Positions 70 to 56,432 are shown, numbered from the stretch's first letter. The stretch is DNA of 64,000 bases from Octopus sinensis (GCF_006345805.1 NC_042998.1:180916001-180980000); one strand, 5' to 3'. Numbers and translations are program-made. Notes: a model not told the origin generated them from the sequence alone.

Positions 70-315
70 GGATATCTCTGTCGTTTCACGTGAAGCGATA
101 AGTGACAGGACTCAATACAGATGTAGAATATTCTTTACCACATTATAATGGAGGGGCTCCGATTTTCAGTTCACAGAGTTACTCGTTTCCCATCATCAGC
201 TGGTAAACCGAGACTGCTTTTGTCTTGAAATATTCCCTGTATGACAATATTTTGAAATATGGAATGAAGCGCTTATCTTTATCATGGAGTTTATGATATT
301 TGTAATAATATTACC

Positions 316-1105
316 TATTTCGTTACTACCCACAATGGGCTAAACACAAAGAGAACAAACAAGGACAGGCAAATGGATTAAGTCGATTACATCGGCCCCG
401 GTGCGTAACTGGTACTTATTTAATCGACCCCGAAAGGATTAAAGGCAAAGTCGACCTCGGTAGAATTTGAACTAGGAACGTAGCGGCAGACGAAATACTT
501 ATGTTTACTACCCACAAGGGGCTAAACACAGAGAGGACAAACAATGACAGACAAACGGATTAAGTCGATTACATCGACTCCAGTGCGTAACTGGTACTTA
601 ATTTATCGATCCCGAAAGGGTGAAAGGCAAAGTCGACCTCAGCGGAATTTGAACTCAGAACGTAACGGCAGACGAAATATATTTCTATTTCTTTACTACC
701 CACAAGGGGCTAAACACAGAGGGGACAAACAAGTACAGACAAACGGATTAAGTCGACTACATCGACCCCAGTGCATAACTGGTACTTAATTTATCGACCC
801 CGAAAGGATGAAAGGCGAAGTCGACCTCGGCGGAATTTGAACTCAGAACGTAGCGGCAGATGAAATTCATATATCTTTACTACCCACAAGGGGCTAAACT
901 CAGAGAGGACAAACAATGACAGACAAACGGATTAAGTCGATTACATCGACTACAGTGCGTAACTGGTACTTAATTTATCGACCCCGAAAGGGTGAAAGGC
1001 AAAGTCGACCTCGGCGGAATTTGAACTTAGAACGTAACGGCAGACGAAATACCGCTAAGCATTTCGCCCAGCGTGCTAACGATTCTGCCAGCTCGCCGCC
1101 TTATC
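316..1105 (-). mobile_element. Tetrameric array of tRNA-derived SINE family M (central domain resembling the Meta domain) inside one 15-bp TSD
   Basis: Four ~185-bp units with core GGTCGACTTTGCCTTTCATCCTTTCGGGGTCGATAAATTAAGTACCAG (minus strand). Only the unit nearest 1105 keeps the A-box head. TSD TGTAATAATATTACC at 301-315 and 1106-1120. The Meta-domain resemblance is from memory and unverified. Confidence 0.9.
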
Positions 1106-1388
1106 TGTAATAATATTACCACGAGAACCAGAAAAGAAAATCAGAAGCGTGATTTTGAAGAAGCCGTTTTTCGCACGTGTCGTTCATAAAGGTTTTCAAA
1201 CGGAAAAACATAAAGATAAGTGTTCTCTTCAGATTTTCATTCCATATTTCAAAAAATATTCAGACAAAGAATAATTCTAAAGAAAACCAGGCTCAGTTTG
1301 CCAGGTGATGATCGGTAATGAGTAACTCAGCGTACTGGAAATGGGAACCGTTCAGTTATGTAACTGTTATTCTTTTCCATATGGGATG

Positions 1389-1776: not shown

Positions 1777-3239
1777 GTCTTTTCTGTATAGTCAACTTTG
1801 GTACAAAGAGTAATTTTTCCCCAAAAGGCAAATAGAATAAAGTAAACAAATAAGTATTTGAAGTGCTTATAATTTTTTAGTGGCCACATGAAAATATTAT
1901 CCGCTATTTAGAAACAAATATAATAACCGATTTTTCACTATTAGTGTACTTTAACTTAAGCAAATTATATCACACTCTTAAACTTGATAATGATAATGGT
2001 GGAAATCAACTAAAATCTGGGTTGCAGTTGGAGACAAGAGATATTTATAATTTCTATAGCATTTTCATGACAATATATCTTTCGGTTCAGCAATTAAAAG
2101 AGAAATAGAATACTGACAACTTCCATTTAATTAGTATAATAATGATTTCTAATTTTAACATCAGATTAATTATTTTTAACATTTATACAGTTGAGTATAA
2201 GAAATATTATAGGCGGCTGAAATTTCCAACAGATTTCTAATACCCATATATAATAGCAACAAAAAAACCTTGCGGTTTATTTTGCCTGTTTGCGATCTGA
2301 ATTCCAACTCCTCTATCGCCTACTCTGGTGGCAGAATAAATTCGTTGGTCGAATGGCTAATATTTTGGCTGCCTTTAGTGGAATCCACTCTGTTACAAGT
2401 ATTCAGACCAGCTCCTCAATTTGGAGATTCTATCCTTCATAATCACCACTTGTCACATATTTATAAAGCATCATAAATACTGCCTTTCTTTCAGGCAATA
2501 TTTTAAAACTTGATCTGAAGGGACAAATATGTAAAGTGAACTCAGACAGAACTTAAACTCAGAACACAAATTGGTCTAACAAAATATATCGATGTATTTA
2601 ATCTTATTATCTACTATTCGCGATGTCTCTTGGCCTTAGAGATGCTACATTAATAAGGTTTTCTAAATCTGATGCAACTTCTCACTTTTGTGGAGTTTAA
2701 CTTATTACATAAATTCATCATAATAGAATGAAATACAATGGGATAAAACTCAGAACGTAAAGTGACGTAATTAACATAGCAAGACCCTTTTGTAGGTGGT
2801 CTACTTTTCTGTCTGTCAACGCTCTTGACTGTACATTAATAATTATAATTTTTGAATAAGGGGGAAATATATATTATCTCTGTGATCCAGCAAGGCAAAC
2901 AAAGACAGATAGTGAGTAATAAACACATAGTGAATTCAATCTCGTAAAGAAAAATCTAATCATGTGTGTCGTTCTGCGACTCCTAACGTACAACATATTT
3001 CATATTTCTTGTACTTTTCCAATGTAGTAAACACAAAAAAGTACATGTTATCCTTTTCTTTTTTTTATGGTTTTCTACTACTGGACTCCGGATAAGCTGA
3101 AGAATACTCGTCGAACATACCTCCCCCATGACATATTTTAATATTGCAAGGATTTTATCGATTACTATTGGTGAAACGTTTAAGTAACTGGAATTAAAAG
3201 AATACAATTTAACACGACTTGAAATTGTTAGCTTTTATA

Positions 3240-3676
3240 TATATTTCTTTACTACCCACAAGGGGCTAAACATAGAGGGGGCAAACAAGAACAGACAAAG
3301 GGATTAAGTCGATTACATCGACCCCAGTGCTAAACTGGTACTTTATTTATCGATCCCGAAAGGATGAAAGGCAAAGTCGACCTCGGTGGAATTTGAACTC
3401 AGAACGTAACGACAGACGAAATGCCTATTTCTATTTCTTTACTACCCAAAAGGGGATAAATACAGAGAAGACATAGAGGGGAGAAACAAGGATAGACAAA
3501 CGGATTAAGTCGATTACATCGACCCCAGTGCGTAACTGGTACTTAATTTATCGACCCCGAAAGGATGAAAGGCAAAGTCGACCTCAGCGGAATTTGAACT
3601 CAGAACGTAACGGCAGACGAAATACCGCTCAGCATTTCGCCCGACGTGCTAACGATTCTGCCAGTTCGCCGCCTTA
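3240..3676 (-). mobile_element. Dimeric SINE family M
   Basis: Two units joined at about 3420-3440; imperfect TSD ATTGTTAG(C/G)T(T/A)TTATA near 3224 and 3676. Confidence 0.88.
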
Positions 3677-5094
3677 TTGTTAGGTATTATAAGGACTGAC
3701 AAGCAAGCATGTAACATGTATTTGCATATATGTGTGCGCGCGCACGTGTATACGTGTTTAAGGTGAAATGAGAAAATCACCAGATGCCTCCCTTTAGTTA
3801 CTCTGAGTTGAATTTCCGCTGACATGAATTTTGCTTTGCATCCTTTTGAGTTCGATAAATAAAGTATCAGATAGGTGTCGATATTTTACTGTTTCTGGTC
3901 CTGTCTTACACTCTTTCTTGAGAGAAAATCAGCTGTGTTCAAACATGAAGGTAAGTTGATCTTCCGTATTTATAATATCTAAGACACGGTGTATAATCGC
4001 GTCGGCGCCCCTTTGACTTCATCAGCAGTACATTTCATACGGATGACGGTCTTCTGTAGTTTTCGTCTACAAGTTTCCACGCAGAACGCTTTGTCTTATC
4101 GGATCCGTAATCAACTCAATTCGATATATGTACATTTATAGAGCGTGCACGCACACACACACAAATACATATAGTGAGAAATTGAGGCGGGCAGATAGCT
4201 AGATAAATAGATAGATAGATAGTGAGAGAGAGAGGGAGACGGAGACGGAGGGGGTTTCATTTAATAAACGCAAATATAACATTTCATTTACTTTCTATTC
4301 CATATATTTCCGGTTTTCTCTTGAGCAGCGTTAAGATAAAAATGATTTAAATCACCATACGAGAGAATATCTAAAACCATTCAAAGAAAATAAAATTTAT
4401 AACTTGATAGTTTCAACTCTGTTTAAAAGAAATAAATTAAACTAAAATTGGAGGAAAAGAAGCATTTAAGTTTTAAGAATTTAATTAGATTTTATTGACG
4501 TGCTGTCTCTCTAATAAATAAATAAAAAATACTGGCTGTCTGCAAGATTTTCGCTTCGGTCACCTCATACACAGAGCTAGTCAGAATTTATTATAGGAAA
4601 GTTAAAGAGAATGACTTAGATAGTCTGACGTCTCCGGATGCTATGAGCTTTAAATTCATATGTGATTTGCCACACGCTGCTGATTTCTTTCGTATGGATG
4701 TTTTTTTTTCTCTATCATTAGAAAATAGTAGCGTGGATGACCAAGTCGATGGAAGAGCAAATAACAATCAACCAATTAGATAGCAATTCTTCTCTTCCCA
4801 TTTATACACTTATTAGGTCTGTACTAAAAAAACAATGGTTCTTCAATAGCAGTCCTATCAACCTGGCTGTAATATGAAAGACGACTTCACAACAATATCG
4901 CTACGAGTGTTTTGTTGCTTAAGGTCCTGAGTTCAACTTCTGTGGTTATGATTTGTAGATGTAGGTTTCATTAAGCTGACAGATCCCTGATATAGCTAAT
5001 GAAAACAAATGTCTGAAGGCGTCTGTACATGGTCGCTCCACCTACTAGAAGCAGCAGACAAATTTCCCTTGAATAACATTCTTCTATCTTAAAA

Positions 5095-9634: not shown

Positions 9635-9894
9635 GCATGTATGGGTACAGGACATCACCGACTGTGTAAACTACATGAAATACGAAAACAACGAGTTAAA
9701 TATGCAAACAACGAGAAGGAAAAATGGAAAATAGGACAAGTAACACGGAGAATGACCCTTCATCAGTTGTCGGCTGTCTATTTACTCCTCATTTCTTGAA
9801 CCATGACCAGTAAACAAGTGTCAGCTTAGTCTGCTGGCTGTGGACAGCTGACACTTACCATTATCCCGAGCAAAATAAGCTGTGAACTTAATAA

Positions 9895-10099
9895 TAGTTT
9901 CAAATTTTGACACAAGGCTAGCAATTTTAGGGAAGGGGCTTAAGTCGATTGGATCGACACCAGAGCTCAACTGGTTCTTGTATTCTCGATCACGAATGGA
10001 TAAAGGGCAAGGCGGAATTTTGGACTCAGAAAATAAAAACGGACGGAAAGTCGCTAAGCATTTCAACTGGCACGGTAACGGTTCTGCCAGCTCGCCGCT
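9895..10099 (-). mobile_element. SINE family M, variant tail (CCTTGTGTCAAAATTTGAAAC)
   Basis: Diverged copy with the family core and the A/B-box head. Confidence 0.8.
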
Positions 10100-16236: not shown

Positions 16237-16624
16237 GTGGAGGCGCAATGGCCTAGTGGCTAGGGCGCGGACTCGCGGTCATAGGATCGCGGTTTCGATT
16301 CCCAGACCGGGCATTGTGAGTGTTTATTGAGCGAAAACACCTAAAAGTTCCACGAGGCTCTGGCAGGGGATGGTGGTGATCCCTGCTGTACTCTTTCACC
16401 ACAACTTTCTCTCACTCTTACTTCCTGTTTCTGTTGTACCTGTATTTCAAAGGGCCGGCCTTGTCACTCTCTGTGTCACGCTGAATATCCCCGAGAACTA
16501 CGTTAAGGGTACACGTGTCTGTGGAGTGCTCAACCACTTACGCGTAAATTTCACGAGCAGGCTGTTCCGTTGATTCGGATCAACCGGAACCCTCGTCGTC
16601 GTAACCGACGGAGTGCTTCCATCC
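16237..16624 (+). mobile_element. tRNA(Arg)-like SINE, tail type A
   Basis: Full-length copy; same sequence as 1389-1776 in the opposite orientation. Confidence 0.9.
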
Positions 16625-16932
16625 ATAACACTTGTACAATGTCATAGAGCATATTTTTATAGCTACGGCAACATACACGTGTTCCCCTGTTCAGAGTATA
16701 AGCAGTTGCACATGCAACCGGACATAATATCTTTTGTGCAGCTTCGTTCAGGATGCTTCAACTAGTTGAAGTGGAAACACGAGTAGGTCGTAGTAACCAT
16801 AAAAATATGCTGTCTGACATTGTAAAATAATTTTCTTTTTAATTTGTGGATGTATCAGTCTCCATTTTCTCTATCGTTATAACTATTACTAACATACGTT
16901 CCATATAATATTCCATCCATATAATATTCCAT

Positions 16933-17161
16933 CGGCGAGCTGGCAGAAACGTTAGCACGCCGGGCGAAATGCGTTGCCGTATTTCGTCTGCCGTTACGTT
17001 CCGAGTTCAAATTCTGCCGAGGTCGACTTTGCCTTTCATCCTTCCGGGGTCGATAAATTAAGTACCAGTTACGCACTGGGATCGATGTAATCGATTTAAT
17101 CCATTTGTCTGTCCTTGTTTGTCTGCTCTGTGTTTAGGCCCTTGTGGGTAGTAAAGAAATA
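16933..17161 (+). mobile_element. SINE family M monomer with TSD
   Basis: GGCGAGCTGGCAGAAACGTTAG (A box) ... GAGTTCAAATTC (B box) ... GTAGTAAAGAAATA; TSD CATATAATATTCC on both sides. Confidence 0.9.
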
Positions 17162-17408
17162 CATATAATATTCCCCACAAGTGAAGCGAATACGGAATTA
17201 TCCAATCGAGGAATTTACAGCGTAAAGGATGATTCGTAGTAGCCATAGACGTGAAATAATAATAGATGCGATTATCCATAATCTGGAACACCACAGTTGA
17301 GAGCTATCACGGTATCCACCCGGAAAATATAACCCTCTAGACCTACATATATATACCTACGTACGTTGCTCCATGTCATATATAGACACATATATATATA
17401 TATATATA

Positions 17409-17592
17409 TTTCTTTACTAACCACAAGGGGCTAAACACAGAGGCGACAAACAAGGACAGACAAAGGGATTAAGTCGATTACATCGACCCCAGTGCGTAAC
17501 TGGTACTTAATTTATCGACCCCGAAAGGATGAAAGGCAAAGTCGACCTCGGCGGAATTTGAACTCGGAACGTAACGACAGACGAAATACGGC
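17409..17592 (-). mobile_element. 5'-truncated SINE family M
   Basis: Family body that stops just past GTATTTCGTC, close to the multimer junction position. Confidence 0.85.
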
Positions 17593-18094
17593 TACGAATA
17601 GCTACATATACATATATATAGCTATGGTATATTCTGTTAAGAACGTAGTAAGGTACACCATATAGCTCGTCGACCTTCAGATTTATCCTGTGCGATCTAG
17701 TAGTATTATACGTACTTTCAAGTTTACATTTAGGCATCTACCGTGCGTGAATAGAGAATTGAAAAAACTGGAGTCAACAAGAAGGATATTCTCAGTGACT
17801 ACTACTAAAGTCAAGCCACCGCAGTCAGAGAAAATGTTCTCGAAGCAGATTTTGAACTTACGGAGACAATATTTACATATTGCCTGAGGAAACACAACTA
17901 GATCTCATAATGCGGTTACATAATCAAACGCCTCGAGAACTACGTTGCGTTGAAACAATTGTAGTGATTAAAAATAAATGTCCAACCGTTCTCCTTGCTG
18001 ACAATTTTTTTTCAATTATTTTCATATATATATATATATATATATCGTTTTTAGAAAAATATAAATCCGGAGAAGAAGCACACTCTAAGAAGTA

Positions 18095-22268: not shown

Positions 22269-23271
22269 ATACCCCAGATTTTCCAGAAAGAAATCCAAAT
22301 GGGTATATAGGAAATTAATTTTAATGCTCATTTTACCTCCTAAGGCGTCGAACTTTTCCAGCATTCTTCAAACTATGTCTTTGTAGTCTGGTTCCTTGTG
22401 ATTGCCCAAGAAGCTCTTCATCGCATTTTAAAAACTAATCCTTGCATCATTATCGGAATCACAAATAGATTTTTAAAATTTTCGTCCTTGACAAGTTTCC
22501 TTATATCTGGCCCAATATATACCCATCTTCAGTCCTGGCGTCTGATGGAGCAGGAAACTTGTTACACAAATACTTGAAGCCCTCTTCATCCTGTGGCAAA
22601 GCTTCAATGATTTGCTTCATGAGTTTTATATTTAATGGGGGCAAAAAACTCTTTAAATCCGCCAAACTTTCTTGAAGGATATTCTTTGTTCCTGGTCTAA
22701 ACGTGTCCTTACTTGATCTTTCTTTTTTTAGACCAATGGCGAAGCAAGGACGCTTCACTCTTGTCCAAGCAACATGCAGATTATTTTCAAGTCGCCGCAA
22801 ATCATCTAGTTGTGACCTTAGAATTTAATCTCGTGTGAGAGTGACGCCGAATTTTCATAAGCTTCTTTAATGACCACTGAGTGTCCAACAGGAGTGGAAT
22901 CATATCTATTACTATTATGAAGTCGAACAGCTTTAAGACTTCTCTTTGAAGAGTCAATAGAGAATCTCCGTACATCAGGGCTGTAACTTATACCAAACTT
23001 TCCTGTTAGTCCTGATGCATTTGTGCAAGAAACCAAATCATTTTCTTGAACGAAATAAGGAACGAATTCTTTTTCGTGGTTACATACCAATAGAATGATG
23101 CATGTGGAGCTAACACATTTTTGGATTTAAGTCTGGATCCTAAAACTCATGCAGACTCCTTTACAAGCCCTAACTCCCTTGCTACTTAAATTAAATTAAT
23201 TTGCACTGGTTGAATGCTTGATGTTTTTCACCTTCTCTGCCATTAAAATCCTCATCCTCATTGTTATTTCT

Positions 23272-23684
23272 TATTTCTTTATTGCCCACAAGGGGCTAAA
23301 CATAGAGGGGACAAACAAGGACAGACAAAGGGATTAAGTCGATTACATTGACCCCAGTGCGTAACTGTTACTTAATTTATCGACCCCGAAAGGATGAAAG
23401 GCAAAGTCTACTTCGGTGGAATTTGAACTCAGAACGTAACGGGAGACGAAATACCTATTTCTTTACTACACACAAGGGCTTAAACACAGAGAGGACAAAC
23501 AAGGACAGGCAAATGGATTAAGTCGATTATATCGACCCCAGTGCATAACTGGTACTTATTTAATCGAACTCGAAAGGATGAAAGGCAAAGTTGACCTCGG
23601 CGGAATTTGAACTCAGAACGAAGCGGCAGACGAAATACCGCTAAGCATTTCACCCGGCCTGCTAACGTTTCTGTCAGCTCACCG
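23272..23684 (-). mobile_element. Dimeric SINE family M inside one 16-bp TSD
   Basis: TSD CCTCATTGTTATTTCT at 23256-23271 and 23685-23700; junction GTAGTAAAGAAATAGGTATTTCGTC. Confidence 0.9.
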
Positions 23685-24667
23685 CCTCATTGTTATTTCT
23701 GCCTTTTGACTCAGAACTTAAGTGTAAACTTTTCAAGGTTTCCTGATGGTGACTAAGCTGGAACGCCTGGTCCATAGACAACAGGTCGCAATGCAGCGGG
23801 GAGATTTAGATAAACAATGTTTTTTTTTTTCTAGCCCTTCGAATTGTTCCCCTGCATCTTGCATGTAAAACAATAGCAGTCATCACTGTAGATTTTGGCT
23901 CTATCCATATCATTGGAACCTGAAAACGAGTAGACTTCTTTGTACATTTTATCCATTGTCTTACTTCTTCAACACAAACTGAGCAGACATTAACATGGGT
24001 CTATTTCTTATCTTGGTCTCGAATTTCACACAAAAGTAAGCACAGTAAGATTTGTTGACAAATTCAGACATATCTCTCTGCCATCTTTTAGTCACAAAGT
24101 TGCCCCAATCGTAATAAAAGTTATTCGAGATTGCTGCACAAGTTCTAGAAGTCATTCTTGCTTCAAATGCCGTGGAATTCTGTAACGAAAAGGGAAGGGA
24201 ACATTTTTAACAATTTATATTTGATTTACTATCGAAATTCATACATATTATGATTAAAGAAGCATTGAGTTGTAATAAAGGATACAATACAACAATGCGT
24301 TTACCATATGCACATTAAAAAGTGGGTATGAGGAAATAACTGGAAAAAAAGTCATGTTTTAACCTAAGCAACGTAACCGAGTAAAGCGAGTCGTTATTTC
24401 CAGATTGCTTGTGAATGACTGAATCTAAGAGATGCAGGTATCTCCCTGTGTAGCTGAAGCAGTCTAAACGTTGCCAGCTGCTTATTTTTCAAAGTTAAAC
24501 CCATTAGTTATTCTGTTATAATCTATTTCAAAATGACAATTTATAGGAATAATAAACAATAGTCAAATTCGGGATAATGGTAAACTGCAATGATTGATTT
24601 TGTGAAGAAACCGTAAGTTGTAAAATAATTTCTTTTTAATTTTTGAAACAAGCAGACACAAACTGAT

Positions 24668-25040: not shown

Positions 25041-26345
25041 TCAGTCAGTTTTATTGGGTTTTTATTTTTTTATAGCCTTTCGTAACTGCCCAAGAAAGCT
25101 GGAATATAGTTCTTCATTGATGGAAGTAGTCAGTAAATAAAATAAAATGCATTTGTACGTGAGAAGGGGTGTTTCTAATGCATGGATTGTCCCTTTGGAG
25201 TTCTTTACATGAACCCCACACGCGCGCACACACAAACATACACAGACACGCATGCACGCGTACACACACACGCATACAAACATGTGCATACATATACACA
25301 CACACGCGCACACATATATTCATGTAAGTACCAGATGTATGTAAGCATATATGTGGCCTGCGTTTGGTTAAGAATTTCACTTCCTACCACAAAAGAACCC
25401 CATACGATCCTATTAGCATCTTGGGAAATTGTACTCTTTCTTGATCTCAAATCGTATATATATCTGTTGTTCTGTTATTGATGGAATCAGTATAAAAGTA
25501 TTCCCCAGTGCCAGATAAATATTATTTAATAAATACACCACTTAAACGTGAGTTACTATAAATACAGTAATTGTAGGAGTTTGTTGTATAGTGTAGCGTG
25601 TTATATACTGCAATTCTTTCAGGCTCGCTCACATGCACAAACAAAAGACACACACACACACATTTATACTCACACATACATCCACACACGCACTCACATG
25701 CAAACATCTACCAATATAAATGTACCAGTTTAGTCTTATATATGATCCATGCGTCTGTATATTTATATGTTAATTGTAATACGAGTTTTCAGTTTCTTTG
25801 TGCATGTAGAAAGAGACGATTATTTCAATTCAATTTACTCTCCCCGGAAGTTGCTTATTGGAAAGGGAACAGGGAGTAGGAAATAGAAAACAGAAAATAC
25901 ATATGTAAAGATTTGTAAAGGAAATATATATTCAATGGGTGTATTTCTGACTCACCTATTTTGAATCTACAGTGTCTCTCTATAAGTTCACAATTAATAT
26001 ATCAATGGTTTGAGGTCATATTCATTCCGTTAGGTAGAATAAAATTCTAATAGGAAATGTTTCACAGTGAATGAAAATGAAAATAGAATGAAATTAAATA
26101 AATCACAACAATTAAAAATAAATTGTATTAGTTTCAAATTTTGACACAAGACAAACAATTCCGGGAGACGGTGTAGGTCGATTACATTGACCTCAGTGCT
26201 CAACTGGTACTTAATTTACTGAACTCGAAAGGATGAAAAGGAAAGCTGTCCTCGGCGGACTTTGGACTCAGAACGATTCTGCCAGTTCGCCGCTCTAAAT
26301 TAAAAACTATCATTAAAGATAATATATGTATATATATATATATAT

Positions 26346-26708
26346 GGAAGCACTCCGTCGGTTACGACGATGAGGGTTCCGGTTGATCCGAATCAACGGA
26401 ACAGCCTGCTCGTGAAATTAACGCGTAAGTGGCTGAGCACTCCACAGACACGTGTACCCTTAACGTAGTTCTCGGGAATATTCAGCGTGACAAAGGGCTG
26501 GCCCTTTGAAATACAGGGTACAACAGAAACAGGAAGTAAGAGTGAGAGAAAGAGTACAGCAGGGATCACCACCATCCCCTGCCGGAGCCTCGTGGAGCTT
26601 TAGGTGTTTTCGCTCAATAAACACTCACAACGTCCGGTCTGGGAATCGAAACCGCGATCCTATGACCGCGAGTCCGCTGCCCTAACCACTGGGCCATTGC
26701 GCCTCCAC
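26346..26708 (-). mobile_element. tRNA(Arg)-like SINE, tail type A, in a (TA)n context
   Basis: Copy of 1389-1776 with small internal deletions. Confidence 0.9.
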
Positions 26709-27498: not shown

Positions 27499-28414
27499 GC
27501 AAGTATGTATATTTGTATATATACGCCCTTGCATATTATCTTTCATATTTATTTTCATTAATATTTTCAGTTTATTTTCATTATTTTTTTCCTTCATTTC
27601 TCATTCATTATCATTTTATTTTTTCTGAAAATTCTACTTTTTATGAGTTTAATAAATTGAACTCATTCTACTGCAAAATCAATGTGGTCGAATAGAGAAA
27701 CTTGCTTTTTGTCTGTATATTCATATACACCAGCAGTATATATACATATACAGACAATATGGGAGGGTAAGAGAGATGGGAGATAAAGATAATGATGGTG
27801 ATGATGGTGGTGGTGAAGATAGAGGAGATGGTGATGAAGGTTGTGGTGGTGGTGATTGGATAGTGAAAAGAGTATTTTTTAAAGTATTGAACTAAGTGTT
27901 TTATATGACCTATCACTTAGTGCACGCGAATAAGTGCATTTCCGTGAAATATTCACGCTTATTTTCGTGGCATATATATGCAATTTAACTAAAGTTACCG
28001 ATAATGTTTTTTTTTCATAGTGAAACTACTTGGTAAAATTTATTAATTATTAAATGTATAATTCTTTACCCTATATTTGTGATAGTTATTTTGAAAATTG
28101 TAAAATCGCTGGAAATTTATAGAGAACCATAAAATATATAACACCTATAGAAATTCTATTTATTAAAACATTTAATTCTTTAGATCGTGTAAAGGTTTGT
28201 ATAGATAATATTCAATTTGTAGTACTTAGAAGACAATATCACAAGCTATAGTGATGTTGTTTTCTATAAAGCTATAATTCTTATTGAAATAATATTTTTC
28301 TACTTGACGTCAAGAACTAAATAGTTTTAACTACGGAACGTAATCGAAGTCATAATCCATCTAAAAAATTATTCTACTACTGCATGGCTACGTTGGTAAT
28401 ACTGTGTTTGTCTT

Positions 28415-28998
28415 AAGGAGGTGAGCTGGCAGAAATTTTAGCACGCCGGGCAAAATGCTGAGCGGTATATCGTCTGCCGCTACGTTCTGAGTTCAAATTC
28501 CGCCGAGGTCGACTTTGCCTGTCATCCTTTCGGGGTCGATAAATTAAGTACCAGTTACGCACTGGTGTCGATATAATCGACTTAATCCGTTTGTCTGTCC
28601 TTGTTTGTCCTCTCTGTGTTTAGCCCCTTGTGGGTAGTAAAGAAATAGGTATTTCGTCTGCCGTTACGTTCTGAGTTCAAATTCCGCCGAGTCAACTTTG
28701 CCTTTCATCCTTTCGGGGTCGATAAATTAAGTTCCAGTTACGCACTGGGTCGATGTAATCGACTTAATCCGTTTGTGCCCTCTATGTTTAGCCCCTTATG
28801 GGCAATAAGGAAATAAGAAACGTTAGCACACCGGGCGAAATGATTGGAGGTATTTCATCTGTGTTATTCCGCTGAGGCCGACTTTGCCTTTCATCCTTTC
28901 GGAGTCGATAAATTAAGTGTCAGTTACGTACTGGCATCGATTTAATCGACTGGCCCCGGCCCCCCAAAATTTCCTTCCTTGTGCCTAGAGTAGAAAAG
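28415..28998 (+). mobile_element. Trimeric SINE family M inside one 17-bp TSD; third unit has the variant tail
   Basis: TSD AATACTGTG(T/C)TTGTCTT at 28398-28414 and 28999-29015. Confidence 0.9.
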
Positions 28999-29530
28999 AA
29001 TACTGTGCTTGTCTTGCCTGTAACTTCATTTAACTTCTCTTAACTTCCCTTAATTTATTCAGTTACAGCATTTCATCTTCCTCCTTTACCTTCTGAACCT
29101 CCTACTAGCGGCCTTACCCTGTTATCTTACTATACTATATGCTTGCTCCCATATAATGAAAAGTTTTTATAAATAGATTTGAAATCTACGGATAGATCTG
29201 CGGTCACCGTAACACTGGATATAGTAACTGTCCCACTAAGCTGTGGATTCTAAATCAAATAAAATATATTAATGAATAGATGCAGGAATGGATCAATGGA
29301 TAACAGTTTACTTTGTAGCTCTAAGGATCTGTGCTGGCCTCGCTGTTTAGTTTCTTGGACAAGTATCTTACACTACACCTTTGAGTCGATGAATGCCTTC
29401 AGTGATATTCTGTAGATAGCAAAAATATGGAAGACCGTAATGCACAAGTATACAACACACAGAGACGCACGCACACACGCACATACAGTCCATCGTGCTC
29501 ACACACTCAAATATATATGCATGTGTATGT

Positions 29531-35420: not shown

Positions 35421-35589
35421 TAAGGATCTCTTCCAGGCGCCCTATTATCGCCTTTTTCAACAATCTAAGTATGTTATGCGGTTTCCAGATATGAGCTCTA
35501 CACACGTGTCAATTTATATCAAAATCGATAAACGATATAGGAGGTGTTAGCTAACAACTCCACAAAAACACCCACAGACAGAATTTCCT

Positions 35590-36775
35590 CAAGGAAAGTT
35601 TTCAGGCTGTCCTTGTATCGTCTCAGTGGCCTTCCAGGGTTTCTTGCTCCAGAATCCAGCTCAGAGTAGATCATCTTTGGTAGACATGTGTCGTCCATTT
35701 GGACTACATGTCCGACCCACCAGAGCTGGGCCTTCATGATGAGGGCTTCGATCCCGGGCATTTCGGCTCTGCGATGCACCTCAGTGTTGGAGATTCTGTC
35801 CCTCCAGGAAATTCCCATGATTCGTCGCAAGCAGCAGAGGTGGAACTGGTCATGTACTCGCATTTGCCTCCTATACAGCGTCCACATCCCGCAGCCGTAG
35901 AGCAGAGAGGTGATGACGACTGACCTATAGACTACCAGCTTGGTGAAAAGTCTGAGGCCTCGTTCGATCCACACACGTGTCCAAAGTCCGCCAAACGAAA
36001 CTCCTGCTTTTGCAAGCCTCGTTTGTCCATGCTGCAGTTTGAGGGCAGGTAGCTTCCCAAGTATGTAAAGCTCTCCACGTTGTTCAGAGTTGTACCCTCA
36101 ATCACAATCTGAGGTTCAGGAGGTGTCAAGCCAGGCGCAGGCTGATGCATCACTTCAGTTTTCACAGTCTAATGGTCAGTCCGAAGGCTTTTGCTGCTTC
36201 TGCGAGACAAGTGGCAAGTTCTTGCAGGTCAGGTTCATTCAATGCAAAGAGAAAGTCTCTCTGAGGTCAAAGAATCGGCCGTCACATCTGTAGCGAATAG
36301 TAACACCAGCATCAGACTTTGACAAGGCGCGGAAGAGCATGGTGACAAACATGAGGCTGAAGGGTGTGGGAGCCATCACGAATGGATCAGAGACATCTCC
36401 GTTTTCCACGATGCGAGCCATCATGTCATCATGAAATGACTGAAGCGAGTTGGCAGAAACTTTAGCATGCCGGAGAAAATGCTTAGCGGTATTTCGTCTG
36501 CCGTTACGTTCTGAGTTCAAATTCCAACGAGGTTGACTTTGTCTTTCATCCTTTCGGGGTCGATAAATTAAGTACCAGTTACCCACTGGGGTCGATGTAA
36601 TCGTCTTAATCCCTTTGTCTGTCCTTGTTTGTCCCTTCTATGCCTCTTGTGGGCAATAAAAAAATATGAAATGACTGGATGATCCTGACGAGCTTTGGTG
36701 GGCAGCCTAGCTTGGACAAGATATCCCACAGTCCCTCTCGGCTGACAATGTCAAAAGGAAGTGGTTGTCCTTTAG
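35590..36775 (-). pseudogene. RTE-clade LINE ORF (RT C-terminal half)
   Basis: IRYRCDGRFFDL, KTEVMHQPAPG, FTYLGS, LLYGC..WT.YRR, CLRRIMGISWRDRISNTEV, W.GHVV.MDD..LPK. Confidence 0.92.
36443..36665 (+). mobile_element. SINE family M monomer inserted in the RTE, 12-bp TSD
   Basis: TSD ATGAAATGACTG at 36431-36442 and 36666-36677. Confidence 0.9.
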
Positions 36776-38034: not shown

Positions 38035-39930
38035 AGAATATAGATTTGACAAAATTACTTTTAATTTGCTTAGCATACGGGAGTATAAGCTAATTACTAT
38101 CTCTTGTTTTTCCAATATTCTTACCATGCAACCGAATTTTAATGCTGTTCGAGTGATGAATGCTATGTTTATGCTTATTTGTTTTTATTATCTTGTTATC
38201 TATATTATACACATTAGCCCCTCCATTGGTGGTGCTACCTATATGTTCTTTCGTATTATATTTTATATTGTTGTTGTTGATGTTATGATTAGTGTTATTG
38301 TTGATATTATTTGTACTACGTTTCATTCTCATTGCTATATTGTTGTTTTTATTGTTATTATTATTGCTGTTATATTTGGTGTTGCAATTTTTATTCTTGT
38401 TACTGTTGGGGATTATAGGTTTCTGTGCTTTATTGGTAATTTAGATAAATGTCTATATTCCTTATTATTGCAATTGATGTTATCAATATTATTACTAGTC
38501 ATTATATTATTATATGGAATATATTTAAATTTACTTTTGTATCCCGTATTCTTTAGTGCCTTGTATTATTCTTTATGTTTATTGAATAAATCCTCATTAG
38601 AAGAGAGATAAATTATTTTACTAATGCTTTTTATAAGAGCTTTTTTATCGATTGTGGATGATTACTAAGATAGCGTATATATATTTTAAGTTAGTGTTTA
38701 GGTTCATGTAAGGTTCATGCAGTCCCGTATTTAGATTATAGTTAACGTCTAGGTAGCTGATTGAGTGGTTTTCACTCCCTCTAGTGATAGAAAGGCCAAA
38801 TCTTTTGAGAAATTTGTACAAACGTTATTTAAGTAGTTCTAGGCATCTGTTAGAGGTATTTCTAATTATAAAAAGTGCATCGCCCCTGTAGAGCCCCCCT
38901 CCAAAGTCTAGAAATTACTTATTTAGTTTGTCTAGAAGATATATTCCCACAAGAAGTCACTTCCGCTAAATCCGGGGATCCCATTGTTATATAAAAATAA
39001 TTACGGTTATCCTTTCTTGCCCGCAATTTATTATCAAATGCAAAAACAGAATTTCAGCCGTGAGGATTACGTTTATTTCTTTTATGCTGATCTTAGTGTG
39101 GTTCTTGGCAAAAATAAGGACACTGGAGTCGTAATTTTGAATATCTAATTGTAAAAGTTTATACTTATCCTTATACTGTATATTATACTTATCCTTATAC
39201 TGTATAACCTATTGCATTTTGGGTATTAGTCCATAATTCAAGTTTAATCTTTTTCCTAAGGGTAGTTATGTACTTATCTGAAACTGCTTTGCTAAATTTT
39301 CCTAAATCTGATTTATTGGGGCAAATTAGTCTAACTTGGGTGTTACTTAAGAAGTTATCCTTATGGTCCTTAATTATAATACGAGGTCTAATAGGTGTAA
39401 AAGGTTCTTTTCTATCACCTATATTGTAATCAGTCATAATTTTCTTAGCGTTAAAGTTGATTGTTTTACGAGTGCTTCTAGGAACTATATTATATATTTT
39501 CGTGATTTCTCTGTGGATGAGTTCATAGTAAGTATTTATGTCCATGTTGTAAGTGTTTCTGGTTTTGTCTGAATCTACTATTATCCTTTTTTTAGATATT
39601 AATTCGAGAATCAGGTTCTGTAGCTTCCTCTGGTGTTCATTGCGCCTAAGGGGGTGCTTTTTAAACTTAATGTCCTCAACAGAGGACCAGAGTTCTTGTT
39701 CAAATGCATTAAGGTGGTTGTTTGATGGTGGTGTTCTACTAGTTCTGAAAATTCCGGTGGTAAGGTCTTTATCGTCCATGGTGTTGATGTTAGTGTTGGT
39801 GTCTAGATAAGTTAGTTCATGCTGCCTGTCGTAGTAGTAGGCATTCCAACGGACTCTATGGGTGAATTCACTGATTTTAAGTATTAGGTCTTTAAGATAG
39901 ATGTTCTTGGGAGGGATAGGGATATTCAAC
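38035..39930 (-). mobile_element. Penelope-like retroelement pseudogene (RT region; GIY-YIG not reached)
   Basis: ORF 39195-39929 NIPIP..RVRW.A..DSDKTRN..KDHKDNF..RLICPNKSDLGK; then QLDIQNY, ITMGS.D.AEV, GLYRGDA (YRDD mutated), YLDV, SNHPQ, Asn-rich linker, LILPYAKQIK. Confidence 0.88.
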
Positions 39931-46200: not shown

Positions 46201-47814
46201 TGTGAAAGTACTCAGTGTGATTAGAACTGCTTTCAGAGGTTCCATAACGATTTGGTGAAAGAAAAAGTTACATTTCTAAATATATAGAATTTTGGCTTCA
46301 TTGGAAAATGACCGAGAGAGCGAGAGATAGACGGTAGAAATGGAAAAGTGATTGAATAAGAGTAAAAAGGTTGAAGGTAAATCTGCACGCTGCACAATAT
46401 GGAATCAAGGCAAACAATGTGGCGTTTGGTTAAAAGACAACGATTTGGCTTAGAATTTGGGGAGCATTAATTTGTAATTTGACAGACGTTTTCTGCTATA
46501 ATTGATTCTATGAAAGAACATTAACTGCAAAAGATTACTGACAAGAGATATAACTATCATAATTATATAGTTTAATGGGCAGTAGTTTTAAGCACCCATC
46601 GCATACTTACGCCTACACACAAACATTAAAAAGATATTCTGCAATTCTTTTCACCTATTATTGGATACAGTCATTGAACTACGACCATCCTTCAAGTGTT
46701 AGTAGTCGATCATATTGATTCTGCTAGTTTTTATTTTAATAATAATATTCATACATCAAATGACTAATTTGTGCTTTTAAATTGATTAGCAGTTTTGCAA
46801 ATATAAACTTAAACACGTGTGTATATTTGTCCACGTGTGTGAATATATGAATATTTTTGTGTATATGCATGTTTATATCAACAATGATGTCTATTATTTG
46901 CTGCCTTACTTAATCTTGAATATATAAATAAATCTCCTAGAAGAAAAGAAAAGATAAATCATAGACATTGGTGCACAACACTGAACGTTATTAGGTCAGG
47001 AAATTCATCACAGGATTAACTTGCGAAATTTGTTCGATTCCAGATATAGAGCTCTAACACTGTTTTATTGACAAACGCCTTTATATATATAAATAGACAT
47101 TAGATTTTGTTGCTTTAAATTTTGAAGAAGTGGACAGATATATATTCCTTAAATATGTATGAGATTAGTAAAAGAATTTCGACATTTTGGACTAAGTCCT
47201 TCAGAGGACAGGATAAAATATCTTTTCATTGTACTTAATTTCTAAGAACTTGGACACATGAAATAGTACATAGATTTTGTGCATCCGTGAGATATAAATC
47301 AGTAAACTAAGTATTCACTGATGTGTACCGCATGGTCCAAGTAAAAGTTAAATCAATATACAAATATACATACTTGAAGTAGCATTATCTTAAAATAACG
47401 ATGCGTATAATATTTACAATATATATAAATTTAGAACGGCATTAGCGATAATGTTTGTCTGAGAGTAAAATTTCCCCAAAGAAGTTACAAAACACAATTC
47501 TCGCTTGAACAGCCTTAAAGTACGTATATTTATTTAATTTTAGCCCCATGAACTTTCGCACAAATCATTTGAGATTTTGTGTAATGGTTTGTGTATCGGA
47601 ACGAGTATTTGTGCATAACCCAGAATAACTGGGTTTGTTCGTCTCTGTAGACACCAAACAAAGTCGAAGCACCGGTGTCTCATGATCCGACGATGACTTT
47701 CTGAGCATGCTCTGTGTTATGCGACTCATAAATGTTTTCGAGAAGTTTCTCTGAGACAAACATTAAAGCTAGCGCAGTTCGACGTCTGTAAATAAACTGT
47801 TATACATATTCTTT

Positions 47815-47960
47815 TCTACTCGAGGCACAAAGCCCGAAATTTTGGGGAAGGGGACCAGTCAATTAGATCAACCCCAGTACGCAATTGGTACTTAATTTAT
47901 CGACCCCCAAAAGGATGAAGGGCAAAGTCGACCTCGGCGCAATTTGAACTCAGAACATAA
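47815..47960 (-). mobile_element. 5'-truncated SINE family M, variant tail
   Basis: Family core present, reverse orientation. Confidence 0.8.
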
Positions 47961-47994
47961 AGACAGACGAACTATGTTATACGTATTGATAAAC

Positions 47995-48332: not shown

Positions 48333-48421
48333 ACTCTTACAGTTGTTTCTACTTTGGAGGTCCGGTATGCTAAAGTTGACATATGATACAAAAATTGAAA
48401 TCCAAAGCTTCATCAGAGAGT
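48333..48421 (-). ncRNA. Type I hammerhead (family H3)
   Basis: ACTCT CTGATGA A GCTTTGGA...TCCAAAGT A GAAAC AACT GTA AGAGT: 5-bp stem I, 8-bp stem II base, GUA triplet. Confidence 0.7.
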
Positions 48422-48835
48422 CAATAAGTCCAACCTAAGAAAAATCTTACCTACGTTTAGGACATTTAGGGAGAAGTGGGGAGCGAACCATAAGGTCTTG
48501 CGGTGGCGTGTCCTTTTATGGTTGCTGGATTCTGGTGTATATACTATATGGTCCGTGAGCCAGCTGGCCGCTAGCGCCTCATTGTAAGCGGGGGCTGCTG
48601 CGTCGAAAATACCATAATTTGAAAATAAGATCGAAATCCGTTTACTGATACATTTTATTAGCTTTTTGAACACTTTGGGTGGGTGGCAGGAGGCTGTATT
48701 AATATATGATAGCCTATCATTCTGTTTGCGATATGGTCCGTAGGTGCCACAGTCTAAATCAAGCGTGACATCCAAGAAGGTCACCGCTGTGATGTTAGTC
48801 TCTATGGTGATTTTAAGGCTAAGGTTGTTGAGGGT
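48413..48835 (-). pseudogene. Penelope-like RT C-terminal/thumb fragment fused to the hammerhead
   Basis: TFLDVTLDL..GTY.PYRK.N....YIN..S.HPP ... AAP.YNEAL..S ... RK.LWFAP.FS.NV..NVGKIFLRL. Confidence 0.88.
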
Positions 48836-49980: not shown

Positions 49981-50284
49981 GAGTGAGAAAGCAGTGAATG
50001 TCATCAAGCCCAATATACGAAGCCCAATATGCTCATCATGACTACCAGTCTGTTATGGGTACACCAGACACATACATCACAACCATACGTGCGCGATATG
50101 GTGATTTCATATCAAGATAAACAGCGCTTGGCCTTGCAGGTGGGGCTCAGTTAACAATTTTCTTCAAAAGGATGCTCAATGAAACGCCCATGTTTCCAGA
50201 GCAGAATCATTCAAACCCCAAACAATTCCTCTGAACACATAGCTATGATGCTCCCCAACTAATCATTATTAAGGTGGCCAACAG

Positions 50285-50485
50285 GCAGGATCGTTAGCAT
50301 ACCGAAAAATATGCTTAGCGGCATTTTGTCCATCTTTACATTCTGCATTCAAATTCCGCCGAGCTCGACTTTGCCTTTCATCCTTTCACGGTCTATAAAT
50401 TCAGTACCAGTGAAACACTGGAGTCGATGTAATAGACTAGTTCCCCCCCCCCCCACGAAATTTCAAGCCTTGTGTAATTAGTCGA
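50285..50485 (+). mobile_element. SINE family M, variant tail, followed by (TAT)n to about 50566
   Basis: Diverged head and core. Confidence 0.75.
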
Positions 50486-53869: not shown

Positions 53870-54098
53870 TATTTCTTTACTACCCACAAGGGGCTAAACA
53901 CAGTGGGAACAAACAAGGACAGACAAACGGATTAAGTCGGTTACGCACTGGTGCGTAACTGGTACTTAATTTATCGACCCCGAAAGGATGAAAGGCAAAG
54001 TCAACCTCGGCGGAATTTGAACCCAGGACGTAACGGCAGACTAAATACGGCCACGCATTTCGCCCGGCGTACTAACGTTTCTGCTAGCTGACCGCCTC
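53870..54098 (-). mobile_element. SINE family M monomer with perfect 15-bp TSD
   Basis: TSD AGTTCTTAGGTTATA at 53855-53869 and 54099-54113. Confidence 0.92.
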
Positions 54099-54458
54099 AG
54101 TTCTTAGGTTATAATGGGCTAGTGAGAGTGGTGCATGTCTTAAGGATCACTGAGGTGTAATAATGTGTAACGTCTATAAGAAATATATATTAGTACCCTG
54201 TTCTTTTTTATGCTGTTTGAAATGTGATCCTACTGTGTTTCTAATTTCTACTTCATCTGGTACCAGTCGACAACGAAGACATCCCTGTGTACCAGCGGTT
54301 GTCAAATTCTAAATGTTCTGCTGTAAGTGCTGAGCAGATTTCCATAGCTGTTCACAAAGACATAGACACCTAAGAAAATTTCCCCGTGTGAGAGTAGCAA
54401 TCCTTAAGGTTGTTGTGTGTGTATGTGTGTGTTCTGATATATATATATATATATATAT

Positions 54459-55116
54459 TTGTAAAAACTGAAGTTCGAAAATGCTGCTGTATTATACAAT
54501 TTTTAATTTTTATATATACATTATAACATGTTTCAGTTCCATATATATTATAACATGTTTCAGTTCCATATATATACGGAGGCGCAATGACCCAGTGGTT
54601 AGGGCAGTGTTTTTTGAGCGAAAACACCTAAAGGTCCACGAGGCTCCGGCAGTGGGTTGGAGATCCCTTGTACTCTTTCGCCACAACTTTCTCTCACTCT
54701 TTCTTCTGTTGGCCTGCTCGCTTAGCCAGCGGGGCGGCGTCATTTGAAGGCTAAAACAATGCAAAGCGCATTGTGACCAGCGATGTGTAGCAACATCTGA
54801 TATCTTGGTCGGCCACGGTGATCACGGTGACGGTGATATATAGATATATATATATATATACATACATATATATACACGATGTGTTTTTTTCAGTTTCCGT
54901 CTACGAAATTCACTAATAAGGCTTTGGTCAGTCTGAGGCAAAAGTAGAAGACATTTGCCTTGCCGATGGCATCACGCAGTGACATGAACCTGGAAGCATG
55001 TGGATAGGAAGCAATCTGCTTAACATGCCTGCACCTCCATACACACACACTTACACATACATGTATGTATGTATGTATGTATGTATGTATGTATGTATGT
55101 ATGTATGTATGTATGT

Positions 55117-55178
<62 letters not shown>

Positions 55179-55402: not shown

Positions 55403-55462
<60 letters not shown>

Positions 55463-56113: not shown

Positions 56114-56175
<62 letters not shown>

Positions 56176-56397: not shown

Positions 56398-56432
<35 letters not shown>

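What the first reader, a model, noticed from the sequence alone, without database searches (positions are those of the whole stretch)
316..1105. Four SINE units enclosed by a single 15-bp target-site duplication
Seen: a head-to-tail tetramer of SINE family M in which only one unit has the Pol III head; one TSD (TGTAATAATATTACC) brackets the whole array, with no TSDs between units. Three more multimers in this window (3240-3676, 23272-23684, 28415-28998) show the same layout. Established: TPRT makes one TSD per insertion event, and some non-LTR RTs such as R2 template-jump. Inference: the SINE is often inserted as a multimeric cDNA, by serial template jumping or from a multimeric or circular RNA, rather than by independent insertions.
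Basis: partly seen in the sequence, partly recalled or inferred. Interest (0 to 1): 0.7.

Follow-up and report, generated by a model that had tools for sequence, protein, structure and literature searches.

The report
SINE multimers inserted as single events
In an octopus genome a short retrotransposon (SINE) often occurs as head-to-tail strings of two to four copies sharing one pair of insertion scars and joined at one fixed nucleotide, which suggests the copies were strung together as RNA or cDNA before integration rather than duplicated afterwards.

Summary
At 316-1105 (minus strand) one SINE head is followed by four about 184-bp units. A perfect 15-bp duplication (301-315, 1106-1120) brackets the array and occurs nowhere else in the window. 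No duplication lies between units. The three other arrays are also real, each inside one 15-16-bp duplication. One correction: every "headless" unit keeps the B-box half of the promoter.

Protein hits show the window is octopus. 60 kb of Octopus vulgaris gave two more arrays, both a full M element plus a headless unit of a sister family. In 8 of 9 junctions a complete tail joins nt 48-50 of the next unit.

Units of one array are not each other's closest relatives; AU tests reject array monophyly (p 0.00015-0.039). One A1 unit groups with first units of other arrays. Later tandem duplication, independent insertions and rolling-circle copying of a circular RNA are therefore disfavoured. The exception is the A1 U1/U3 pair, which are sisters.

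Best reading: each array is one target-primed insertion of a concatenated cDNA. Fresh template switching and copying of already-composite source elements cannot be separated with 124 kb; both probably occur.

Similar single-duplication arrays were reported in a clam in 2024. This is a new variant of a known kind.

The parts
1106..1120 (.). TSD copy at the 5' (head) side of array A1, TGTAATAATATTACC on the + strand
   Evidence: Exact 15-mer found only here and at 301-315; expected 0.02 matches.
301..315 (.). TSD copy at the 3' (tail) side of array A1
1052..1105 (-). The only A-box half of the head in A1: leader GATAA plus nt 1-49 (GGCGGCGAGCTGGCAGAATCGTTAGC...GCTTAGCGG). It includes the 5' strand and loop of a predicted hairpin.
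   Evidence: Sequence; head alignment; fold.
868..1051 (-). A1 unit 1 (body from TATTTCG to the tail), sublineage 'a'
   Evidence: Sister of unit 3 with support 96/92.
680..867 (-). A1 unit 2, headless, with complete tail plus one extra GAAATA; a different sublineage
   Evidence: 92.1% to U1 and U3, 87.6% to U4.
498..679 (-). A1 unit 3, headless, sublineage 'a'
   Evidence: 96.6% identical to U1 and shares derived sites CACCC, GTCATTG and ACTG-AGTCG.
316..497 (-). A1 unit 4, headless, sublineage 'b'; it abuts the TSD
   Evidence: Groups with the first units of arrays A3, V1 and V2 (support 91/86 and 92/87).
859..878 (-). A1 junction 1: AAAGATATA-TGAA-TTTCATC (degenerate form of the tail-to-nt-48 junction)
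671..694 (-). A1 junction 2: AAAGAAATAGAAATA|TATTTCGTC (tail with two hexamers joined to nt 50)
488..511 (-). A1 junction 3: GTAAACATAA|GTATTTCG (tail joined to nt 49)
3239..3675 (-). Array A2: full M plus headless M (alpha lineage). Junction GAAATAGAAATA|GGCATTTCG. TSDs at 3224-3238 and 3676-3690 (13/15).
   Evidence: The two units are not sisters (AU p=0.039).
23272..23684 (-). Array A3: full M ('b' lineage) plus headless M (alpha). Junction GAAATA|GGTATTTCG. TSDs at 23256-23271 and 23685-23700 (16/16).
   Evidence: AU p=0.00015 against unit monophyly.
28414..28998 (+). Array A4: full M (28414-28647), headless M alpha (28648-28815, same junction as A3), then a family-N unit starting at head nt 15 (28816-28998). 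TSDs at 28398-28413 and 28999-29014 (15/16).
   Evidence: AU p=0.0031.
47811..47974 (-). Solo headless family-N unit starting at nt 50, with its own TSD (47798-47810 and 47975-47987, 12/13)
   Evidence: It shows that nt 48-50 is also a 5' end outside arrays.
17406..17594 (-). Solo headless M unit starting at nt 44, in a (TA)n context
16931..17161 (+). Reference monomer of family M with head; TSD CATATAATATTCC. Other monomers: 36443-36665 (+), 53870-54098 (-), 55181-55398 (-) with its duplicate 56178-56395 (-), and 58955-59185 (-).

Best explanation
Each array is the product of a single target-primed reverse-transcription event that integrated a concatenated cDNA. The concatemer is one full-length family-M element at the 5' end, followed by one to three '3' modules'. 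Each module starts at nt 48-50 of the head, on the 3' side of the loop of a predicted anticodon-like hairpin, and runs through the B box and core to a complete tail recognised by the partner LINE (the autonomous retrotransposon that supplies the reverse transcriptase, RT).

The joining happens at the RNA/cDNA stage. One option is that the LINE RT, after copying a SINE RNA up to nt 48-50, resumes on the 3' tail of an M RNA (serial template switching). The other is that it copies an RNA that is already such a concatemer. Concatenation has happened repeatedly, and some concatemers (b-alpha, b-N) keep a working head and tail and probably serve as source elements themselves.

Shown: single TSD, fixed junction, complete tails, heterogeneous units. 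Inferred: that the joining is by RT switching, and why it occurs at nt 48-50.
For: 1. One TSD per array in 6 of 6 arrays, none between units.
2. All 9 junctions begin at the true 3' terminus of an M element (GAAATA, sometimes doubled, as at TSD-adjacent ends). A DNA duplication has no reason to respect that terminus. Eight of nine continue at nt 48-50.
3. The same 5' end is seen in solo inserts with their own TSD (47811-47974; also 17406-17594), so it is a property of the template or RT, not only of arrays.
4. Units of one array come from different lineages. AU tests reject array monophyly: A1 0.031, A2 0.039, A3 0.00015, A4 0.0031. A1_U4 groups with first units of A3, V1 and V2 (92/87).
5. 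Three arrays fuse two different SINE families (M+N) inside one TSD.
6. Five architectures occur among six arrays. An exclusive clade of the dimers' second units is rejected (p=0.010), because head-bearing monomers interleave with them. This argues for recurrent formation.
7. The upstream partner is M in 9 of 9 junctions (p about 0.005-0.03 by abundance). M's tail GAAAUA is the exact complement of nt 50-55 UAUUUC next to the break (0.3% of shuffles; post hoc).
8. The same architecture is present in an independent assembly of O. vulgaris, so it is not an assembly artefact.
Against: - There is no RNA data and no empty or orthologous site.
- The sample is small: 6 arrays in 124 kb.
- A3 and A4 are reciprocal nearest neighbours in both units. 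The 'b' lineage is found in 5 of 6 arrays and 0 of 6 single-unit loci (Fisher p=0.015, clade chosen after seeing the tree). Both fit inheritance from composite sources rather than fresh jumps.
- A1 U1 and U3 are sisters (96.6%). A1's TSD begins GGTA like nt 48-51, so DNA slippage could have added units there.
- The hairpin is only predicted. 84% of cells can pair, but covariation is no better than shuffles.
- The tail-to-nt-50-55 duplex is only 6 AU-rich base pairs.
- The partner LINE was not identified.
Confidence: 0.55

Rival explanations
1. Composite source elements only. Concatenation happened once or a few times long ago. The arrays seen today are ordinary retrotransposed copies of a few multimeric Pol III-transcribed master elements (as Alu is a dimer), with occasional gain or loss of units.
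For: - The junction GAAATA|GGTATTTCG is identical in A3, A4, V1 and V2.
- A3 and A4 agree in both units.
- V1 and V2 share architecture and first-unit lineage.
- The 'b' lineage occurs only in arrays.
- A1 and A3 have no T4 terminator inside; the other arrays carry only TTTT runs that depart from the family consensus, so a Pol III transcript could span them.
Against: - Five architectures occur among six arrays.
- A 'b' unit is first in three arrays but last in A1.
- An exclusive clade of the dimers' second units is rejected (p=0.010), with head-bearing monomers nested among them.
- The N units of V1 and V2 differ, and each shares sites with the solo headless N of the window.
- A4 carries an extra N unit joined at a different position.
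Confidence: 0.25
2. Post-insertion tandem duplication at the DNA level. A monomer was inserted, and unequal crossing-over or replication slippage later multiplied its 3' part.
For: - A1 U1 and U3 are sisters (96/92 and 97/93).
- A1's TSD starts with GGTA, as does unit nt 48-51, giving a 4-nt direct repeat that could produce exactly this junction.
- This is how clam and squamate SINE arrays are explained in PMC11481361 and PMC10702118.
- L006:1836-2027 shows that such duplications do occur in octopus.
Against: - Array monophyly is rejected for all four window arrays.
- U2-U4 identity is 87.6%, so there is no two-unit periodicity.
- M+N hetero-arrays cannot arise by duplication.
- The other five arrays have no GGTA after the tail.
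- The duplicated block would have to end exactly at the element's 3' terminus in every array.
Confidence: 0.08
3. Independent successive insertions. 5'-truncated copies landed one after another in or next to the tail of an earlier copy.
For: TSDs of this family begin with (A)ATA, resembling the tail, so tails could attract insertions. Full-length head-to-tail SINE multimers are common in rodents, and their origin is left open in PMC8466645.
Against: No TSD or flank lies between units in any of 9 junctions. Eight of nine downstream units would have to be truncated at the same nucleotide and land exactly at the end of the tail. I worked through nested-insertion geometries; they predict head nt 36-47 at the junction or an inverted orientation, and neither is seen.
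Confidence: 0.03
4. Rolling-circle reverse transcription of a circular unit RNA (retrozyme-like), giving a multimeric cDNA.
For: Tandem units of about 184 nt inside one TSD resemble non-LTR retrozyme arrays (10.64898/2026.07.22.740005).
Against: - Adjacent units are never the most similar pair; within-array identities are 86.5-92%.
- Units belong to different lineages or families.
- No hammerhead or other ribozyme match was found, even at E up to 10.
- The first unit carries a head that a circle of the unit would not contain.
Confidence: 0.03

Closest known systems
TSD1-(SINE)n-TSD1 arrays of conserved-domain tRNA-SINEs in the blood clam Scapharca broughtonii (Martelossi et al. 2024, PMC11481361)
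   Same: Mollusc tRNA-type SINE with a conserved central domain. Arrays lie inside one TSD. The first unit has a complete head and later units share the same head truncation.
   Different: In the clam the first and internal units also lack the 3' tail, which is the signature of an internal DNA duplication, and the authors invoke unequal recombination. In octopus every unit has a complete tail, units are heterogeneous and sometimes from another family, and arrays are short (2-4 units).
Chimeric retrocopies made by LINE reverse-transcriptase template switching (U6-L1 chimeras in mammals; the tripartite chimeras of Magnaporthe, PMC2104539; R2 end-to-end template jumping)
   Same: Several RNA copies are fused directly, in the same orientation, inside one TSD. 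The 3' component is 5'-truncated, and two successive jumps are documented (abstract shown; the R2 and U6 facts are from my own knowledge).
   Different: Here donor and acceptor are the same SINE superfamily. The switch point is fixed (nt 48-50) rather than variable. The acceptor is entered exactly at its recognition tail. The products make up about half of head-bearing copies instead of being rare.
Composite (dimeric) SINE families such as Alu, Twin, B1-dID and the bivalve Meta-Deu SINEs
   Same: Two SINE-like modules are transcribed from one 5' promoter and retrotransposed as a unit. The A3/A4 and V1/V2 pairs may be such families.
   Different: Classical composites have one fixed architecture. 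Here unit number (2-4) and unit identity vary between loci.
Non-LTR retrozymes (tandem hammerhead-ribozyme repeats; preprint 10.64898/2026.07.22.740005)
   Same: Short tandem units that are non-autonomous and thought to be inserted as multimers.
   Different: There is no ribozyme, units are not homogeneous, and a Pol III-type head is present.
SINE-derived satellites of squamates (PMC10702118) and full-length B2/Dip/B1 multimers of rodents (PMC8466645)
   Same: Tandem structures built from SINE sequence. Terminal units extend to the SINE terminus.
   Different: The squamate satellites are long, homogenised and subtelomeric, and are explained by DNA recombination. The rodent multimers consist of full-length units joined through A-tails. 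The octopus arrays are short, dispersed, headless inside and heterogeneous.

Membership tests
tRNA-derived (type 2 Pol III promoter) SINE mobilised by a LINE | Internal A and B boxes in the 5' head | tested here: inconclusive
   By eye, TGGCAGAATCG matches TRGCNNAGTGG at 9 of 11 positions, and GTTCAAATTCC is B-box-like. There is no promoter assay.
tRNA-derived (type 2 Pol III promoter) SINE mobilised by a LINE | Recognisable homology of the head to a tRNA | tested here: not met
   ARAGORN found 0 genes. Rfam gave no tRNA match at gathering score or up to E=10 on 250-1200. The head is at best a degenerate tRNA relic.
tRNA-derived (type 2 Pol III promoter) SINE mobilised by a LINE | Short non-coding dispersed copies flanked by variable TSDs | tested here: met
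   About 230-bp copies at more than 10 loci with different 12-16-bp TSDs.
tRNA-derived (type 2 Pol III promoter) SINE mobilised by a LINE | 3' tail shared with a partner LINE | not tested
   No LINE 3' end matching ...GGGTAGTAAAGAAATA was found in the 124 kb available. A genome-wide search is needed.
Template-switch chimeric retrocopy | Components fused directly in the same orientation within one TSD | tested here: met
   6 arrays and 9 junctions with no intervening TSD.
Template-switch chimeric retrocopy | Components derive from different source RNAs | tested here: met
   Array monophyly is rejected by AU tests. M+N hetero-arrays occur.
Template-switch chimeric retrocopy | Switching by the reverse transcriptase during one TPRT event | not testable with these tools
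   This needs a retrotransposition assay or RNA/cDNA data.
Composite (multimeric) SINE family with its own source genes | The same architecture at many loci, with concordant phylogeny of each module | tested here: inconclusive
   A3/A4 and V1/V2 are pairwise concordant. However, there are 5 architectures in 6 arrays, and the second-unit clade is rejected at p=0.010.
Non-LTR retrozyme | Type I hammerhead ribozyme in every unit | tested here: not met
   No ribozyme family matched up to E=10 on either strand of the array.
Non-LTR retrozyme | Near-identical units, as expected from rolling-circle copying | tested here: not met
   Adjacent units are 86.5-92% identical and belong to different clades.
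SINE-derived satellite / DNA-level tandem duplication | Units of an array are each other's closest relatives, and the repeat boundary is unrelated to the element's termini | tested here: not met
   AU tests. Every junction coincides with the exact 3' terminus. The only exception is the A1 U1/U3 pair.

The most novel reading that the evidence does not exclude
The joining is sequence-programmed at the RNA level. The M tail (AGAAAUA-3') imitates the 5' strand of the head's anticodon-like hairpin (CGAAAUG) and pairs with UAUUUC (nt 50-55) of another SINE RNA that has been cut, or on which the RT has paused, at the loop. SINE RNAs of this superfamily would then be strung together at a defined nucleotide. 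The joining step could be RT switching guided by donor-acceptor pairing, or sealing of tRNA-half-like fragments by the tRNA ligase. Either would be a dedicated mechanism for shuffling SINE modules and could explain the 'mosaic' evolution of SINE heads, cores and tails.
Probability: 0.15. Interest if true: 0.8.

Novelty: new variant of a known kind. Interest (0 to 1): 0.55.

Why it matters
About half of the head-bearing copies of one abundant octopus SINE in the sequence available are multi-unit. If each is a single insertion, then copy counts, age landscapes and family definitions for octopus SINEs are distorted, because standard repeat annotation counts each unit as an event. SINEs are reported at 11.6% of the O. 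vulgaris genome (PMC13282606).

The fixed junction also gives a tractable natural system for studying template choice by a LINE reverse transcriptase. It offers a concrete route by which SINE modules from different families become fused. Finally, it supplies a testable alternative to the recombination explanation given for similar arrays in bivalves.

Tried and rejected
- I translated an ORF across a unit junction to fish SINE-bearing contigs out of the protein database. No candidate was found.
- I scanned metagenome, prokaryote-genome and viral contig collections for SINE motifs. Only three metagenome contigs matched, and they share just the 39-bp central core. There were no further copies.
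- An RT-fragment ORF led to three 20-kb O. vulgaris loci, which were useful. The profile search that followed returned mostly other animals. Four further look-ups gave no SINE-bearing sequence.
- Pfam found nothing in the five longest ORFs.
- I joined the two flanks of A1 to look for a paralogous empty site in another copy of the host foldback element. None exists in the sequence held.
- A dimer-block (higher-order) structure of A1, suggested by TRF's period-372 row, is rejected. It is driven only by U1 resembling U3, and U2-U4 identity is 87.6%.
- Covariation support for the head hairpin: none.
- Microhomology between the tail and head nt 36-40 (GAAAT), and nested-insertion geometries, predict junctions that are not observed.
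- Literature searches found no description of multi-unit octopus SINEs.

Full report
**What is there**

The window is AT-rich, microsatellite-laden eukaryotic DNA. An ORF for the C-terminal part of a LINE reverse transcriptase (35519-35974, minus strand) has its best hits in Octopus bimaculoides and O. vulgaris proteins at 73-79% identity. The window therefore comes from an octopus genome; I could not fix the species.

The feature at 316-1105 reads on the minus strand as follows:
- a leader and head, GATAA-GGCGGCGAGCTGGCAGAATCGTTAGCACGCTGGGCGAAATGCTTAGCGG;
- four units of about 184 nt, each running from TATTTCGTCTGCCG through GAGTTCAAATTCC (B-box-like) and a conserved core to the tail GGGTAGTAAAGAAATA.

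TRF gives period 184, 4.0 copies. The 15-mer TGTAATAATATTACC lies immediately outside both ends, at 301-315 and 1106-1120, and nowhere else in 64 kb even with one mismatch (expected 0.02).

One correction is needed. Internal units lack only the first 47-49 nt, the A-box half. Each still carries the B-box half.

**The family in the window and in O. vulgaris**

blastn with one full element finds ten independent family-M loci in the window:
- four multi-unit arrays: A1 at 316-1105, A2 at 3239-3675, A3 at 23272-23684 and A4 at 28414-28998;
- five head-bearing monomers, one of them duplicated by a 1-kb segmental duplication;
- one solo headless unit.

All arrays and monomers have flanking direct repeats of 12-16 bp, which score above 99% of random flank pairs. 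Their sequences are:
- A1: 15/15.
- A2: ATAATACCTAACAAT / ATAAAAGCTAACAAT.
- A3: AGAAATAACAATGAGG.
- A4: AATACTGTGYTTGTCT.

At least two sister families share M's head and core but have different tails: N (...GCCTAGAGTAGAAAAG) and O (...GCCAAAATTTGAAAC).

The third unit of A4 is family N and starts at head nt 15.

Three 20-kb pieces of the O. vulgaris assembly GCA_951406725.2 were reached through RT-like proteins. They contain two more arrays (L005:1907-2304 and L005:12067-12460). Each is an M element followed by a headless N unit, has the same junction as A3 and A4, and lies inside one TSD (15/16 and 15/15). The architecture is therefore not an assembly artefact of one genome.

**Anatomy of the junctions**

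There are nine junctions. In all nine the upstream partner ends with the complete M tail. This is the same terminus that abuts the TSD in monomers, sometimes with a second GAAATA hexamer. In eight of nine the downstream unit begins at nt 48-50, numbering from the G of GGCGGCG:
- GAAATA|GGTATTTCG in A3, A4, V1 and V2;
- GAAATAGAAATA|GGCATTTCG in A2;
- three slightly degenerate versions in A1.

Nothing resembling a 12-16-bp TSD lies between units.

The same 5' end occurs outside arrays. A solo headless N unit (47811-47974) starts at nt 50 and has its own 12/13 TSD. A solo headless M unit (17406-17594) starts at nt 44.

Folding puts nt 48-50 on the 3' side of the loop of a hairpin, CGAAAUGC-UUAGCG-GUAUUUCG, extendable to 13 bp. 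The pairing potential is kept in 84% of cells across 20 heads of the M, N and O families. Covariation is no better than in shuffles, so the structure remains a prediction.

I also noticed that the M tail hexamer GAAAUA is the exact complement of nt 50-55 (UAUUUC). This makes the junction a palindrome, GAAATA-GG-TATTTC. A match this close to the break arises in 0.3% of shuffles, but it was noticed post hoc.

**Are the units sisters?**

A maximum-likelihood tree of the 17 body units of the window gives three supported groups. Two O. vulgaris units were added.
- A1_U1 + A1_U3: support 96/92.
- A1_U4 with the first units of A3, V1 and V2 ('b' clade): 91/86, and 92/87 after adding the O. vulgaris units.
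- An 'alpha' clade (85/84) that holds the second units of A2, A3 and A4 together with four head-bearing monomers.

AU tests reject monophyly of the units of each array: A1 p=0.031, A2 0.039, A3 0.00015, A4 0.0031.

Within A1, U1 and U3 are 96.6% identical, and every other pair is 87.6-92.1%. U2-U4 identity is 87.6%, so TRF's period-372 row does not reflect duplication of a two-unit block.

Three of six arrays combine two SINE families. This is the reverse of what post-insertion tandem duplication predicts. It also rules out rolling-circle copying of one circular RNA. Rfam finds no ribozyme, and no tRNA either, in the array up to E=10.

**Mechanism**

Independent insertions are excluded by the anatomy. 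DNA-level duplication is excluded for five arrays. It remains possible only as a contributor in A1, where U1 and U3 are sisters and the TSD happens to start with GGTA, the same bases as nt 48-51.

Two versions are hard to separate with 124 kb of sequence.

Evidence for recurrent, fresh concatenation:
- five architectures among six arrays;
- a 'b' unit that is first in three arrays and last in another;
- rejection of an exclusive clade of the dimers' second units (p=0.010);
- the extra N unit of A4, joined at a different position;
- the existence of solo inserts ending at the same nucleotide.

Evidence for inheritance from composite source elements:
- identical junctions in several arrays;
- A3 and A4 are reciprocal nearest neighbours in both units;
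- the 'b' lineage is present in 5 of 6 arrays and 0 of 6 single-unit loci (Fisher p=0.015, clade chosen after seeing the tree);
- the family consensus has no T4 terminator, and A1 and A3 have none inside.

I think both happen. Concatemers form repeatedly, and because they retain a head and a valid tail, some propagate.

Why the switch sits at nt 48-50 is inference. It could be a discrete RNA 5' end (cleavage in the anticodon-like loop) or an RT stop there. The acceptor RNA's tail may be held nearby by pairing with nt 50-55. The upstream partner is M in 9 of 9 junctions, although N and O copies are about as common (p about 0.005, or 0.03 counting arrays). This is consistent with a role for the M tail, but a founder effect could produce the same pattern.

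**Comparison with the literature**

I found no description of multi-unit octopus SINEs in the searchable literature.

The closest report is in the blood clam. TSD1-(SINE)n-TSD1 arrays there have a complete head only in the first unit, but internal units are truncated at both ends, and the authors favour unequal recombination (PMC11481361).

Other related work:
- Squamate SINE-derived satellites (PMC10702118) and rodent B2/Dip multimers of full-length units (PMC8466645) are further relatives.
- Serial template jumps that give tripartite chimeras inside one TSD are documented for a fungal LINE (PMC2104539).
- Retrozymes do not fit, for lack of a ribozyme and of unit homogeneity.

The octopus case is therefore a new variant of known kinds, namely chimeric retrocopies and composite SINEs. 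What distinguishes it is its frequency (6 of 11 head-bearing M loci), its fixed junction, its complete tails and its mixed-family units.

**Limits**

- The sample is small.
- There is no RNA evidence.
- The partner LINE was not identified.
- No orthologous or empty site could be examined with these tools.

Noticed in passing
window 145-282 and 1210-1359: Array A1 lies between the arms of an inverted repeat (124 nt at 77% plus 30 nt at 70% complementary), so it is inserted near the centre of a foldback or MITE-like element. Its TSD is itself nearly palindromic. No other copy of this host element exists in the sequence held, so no paralogous empty site was available.
   Followed up: partly
window about 54100-56400: There is a tandem segmental duplication of about 1 kb. 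TRF rows recur at +1000 (54514/55514, 54836/55836, 55061/56062). The SINE copies at 55181-55398 and 56178-56395 are identical over the body units aligned, with one mismatch in the head part.
   Followed up: partly
L001:483-521, L002:1786-1824, L003:947-985 (JGI metagenome contigs): Only the 39-bp central core of the SINE (GACTTTGCCTTTCATCCTTTCGGGGTCGATAAAT...) matches, at 90%, with no head or tail. This behaves like a highly conserved SINE central domain shared with other animals. Which named superfamily it belongs to was not determined.
   Followed up: partly
window 63350-63560, 59333-59560, 60600-60838, 50270-50470, 9880-10098, 26080-26293: Sister SINE families N and O share the head and core with M but have two other tails, a 'jigsaw' module pattern. 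The copy at 26150-26293 has lost head nt about 23-70 by an internal deletion.
   Followed up: partly
L006:1836-2027 (O. vulgaris): Two 5'-truncated sister M copies are separated by a repeated flank, AATATATAYTATAYAC. This is a contrast case in which flank or TSD sequence does sit between units, as expected for DNA-level duplication or adjacent insertion.
   Followed up: partly
window about 1389-1500; also 16593-16624, 26344-26373, L004:3161-3190, L005:19104-19133: Another dispersed repeat family begins here (GGGATGGGATGGAAGCACTCCGTCGG...). It was seen only through 30-32-nt matches.
   Followed up: no
window 35519-35974 (-), 39195-39929 (-), 48413-48784 (-): These are retroelement ORF fragments. 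The first is a LINE RT C-terminal region with 73-79% identity to O. bimaculoides and O. vulgaris proteins. The other two look like Penelope-like pieces from memory, but Pfam gave no hit.
   Followed up: partly
TSDs of all M and N copies: Target-site duplications start with (A)ATA in most copies, echoing the tails ...GAAATA and ...AAAAG. This suggests microhomology between the nicked target and the SINE tail at priming.
   Followed up: no
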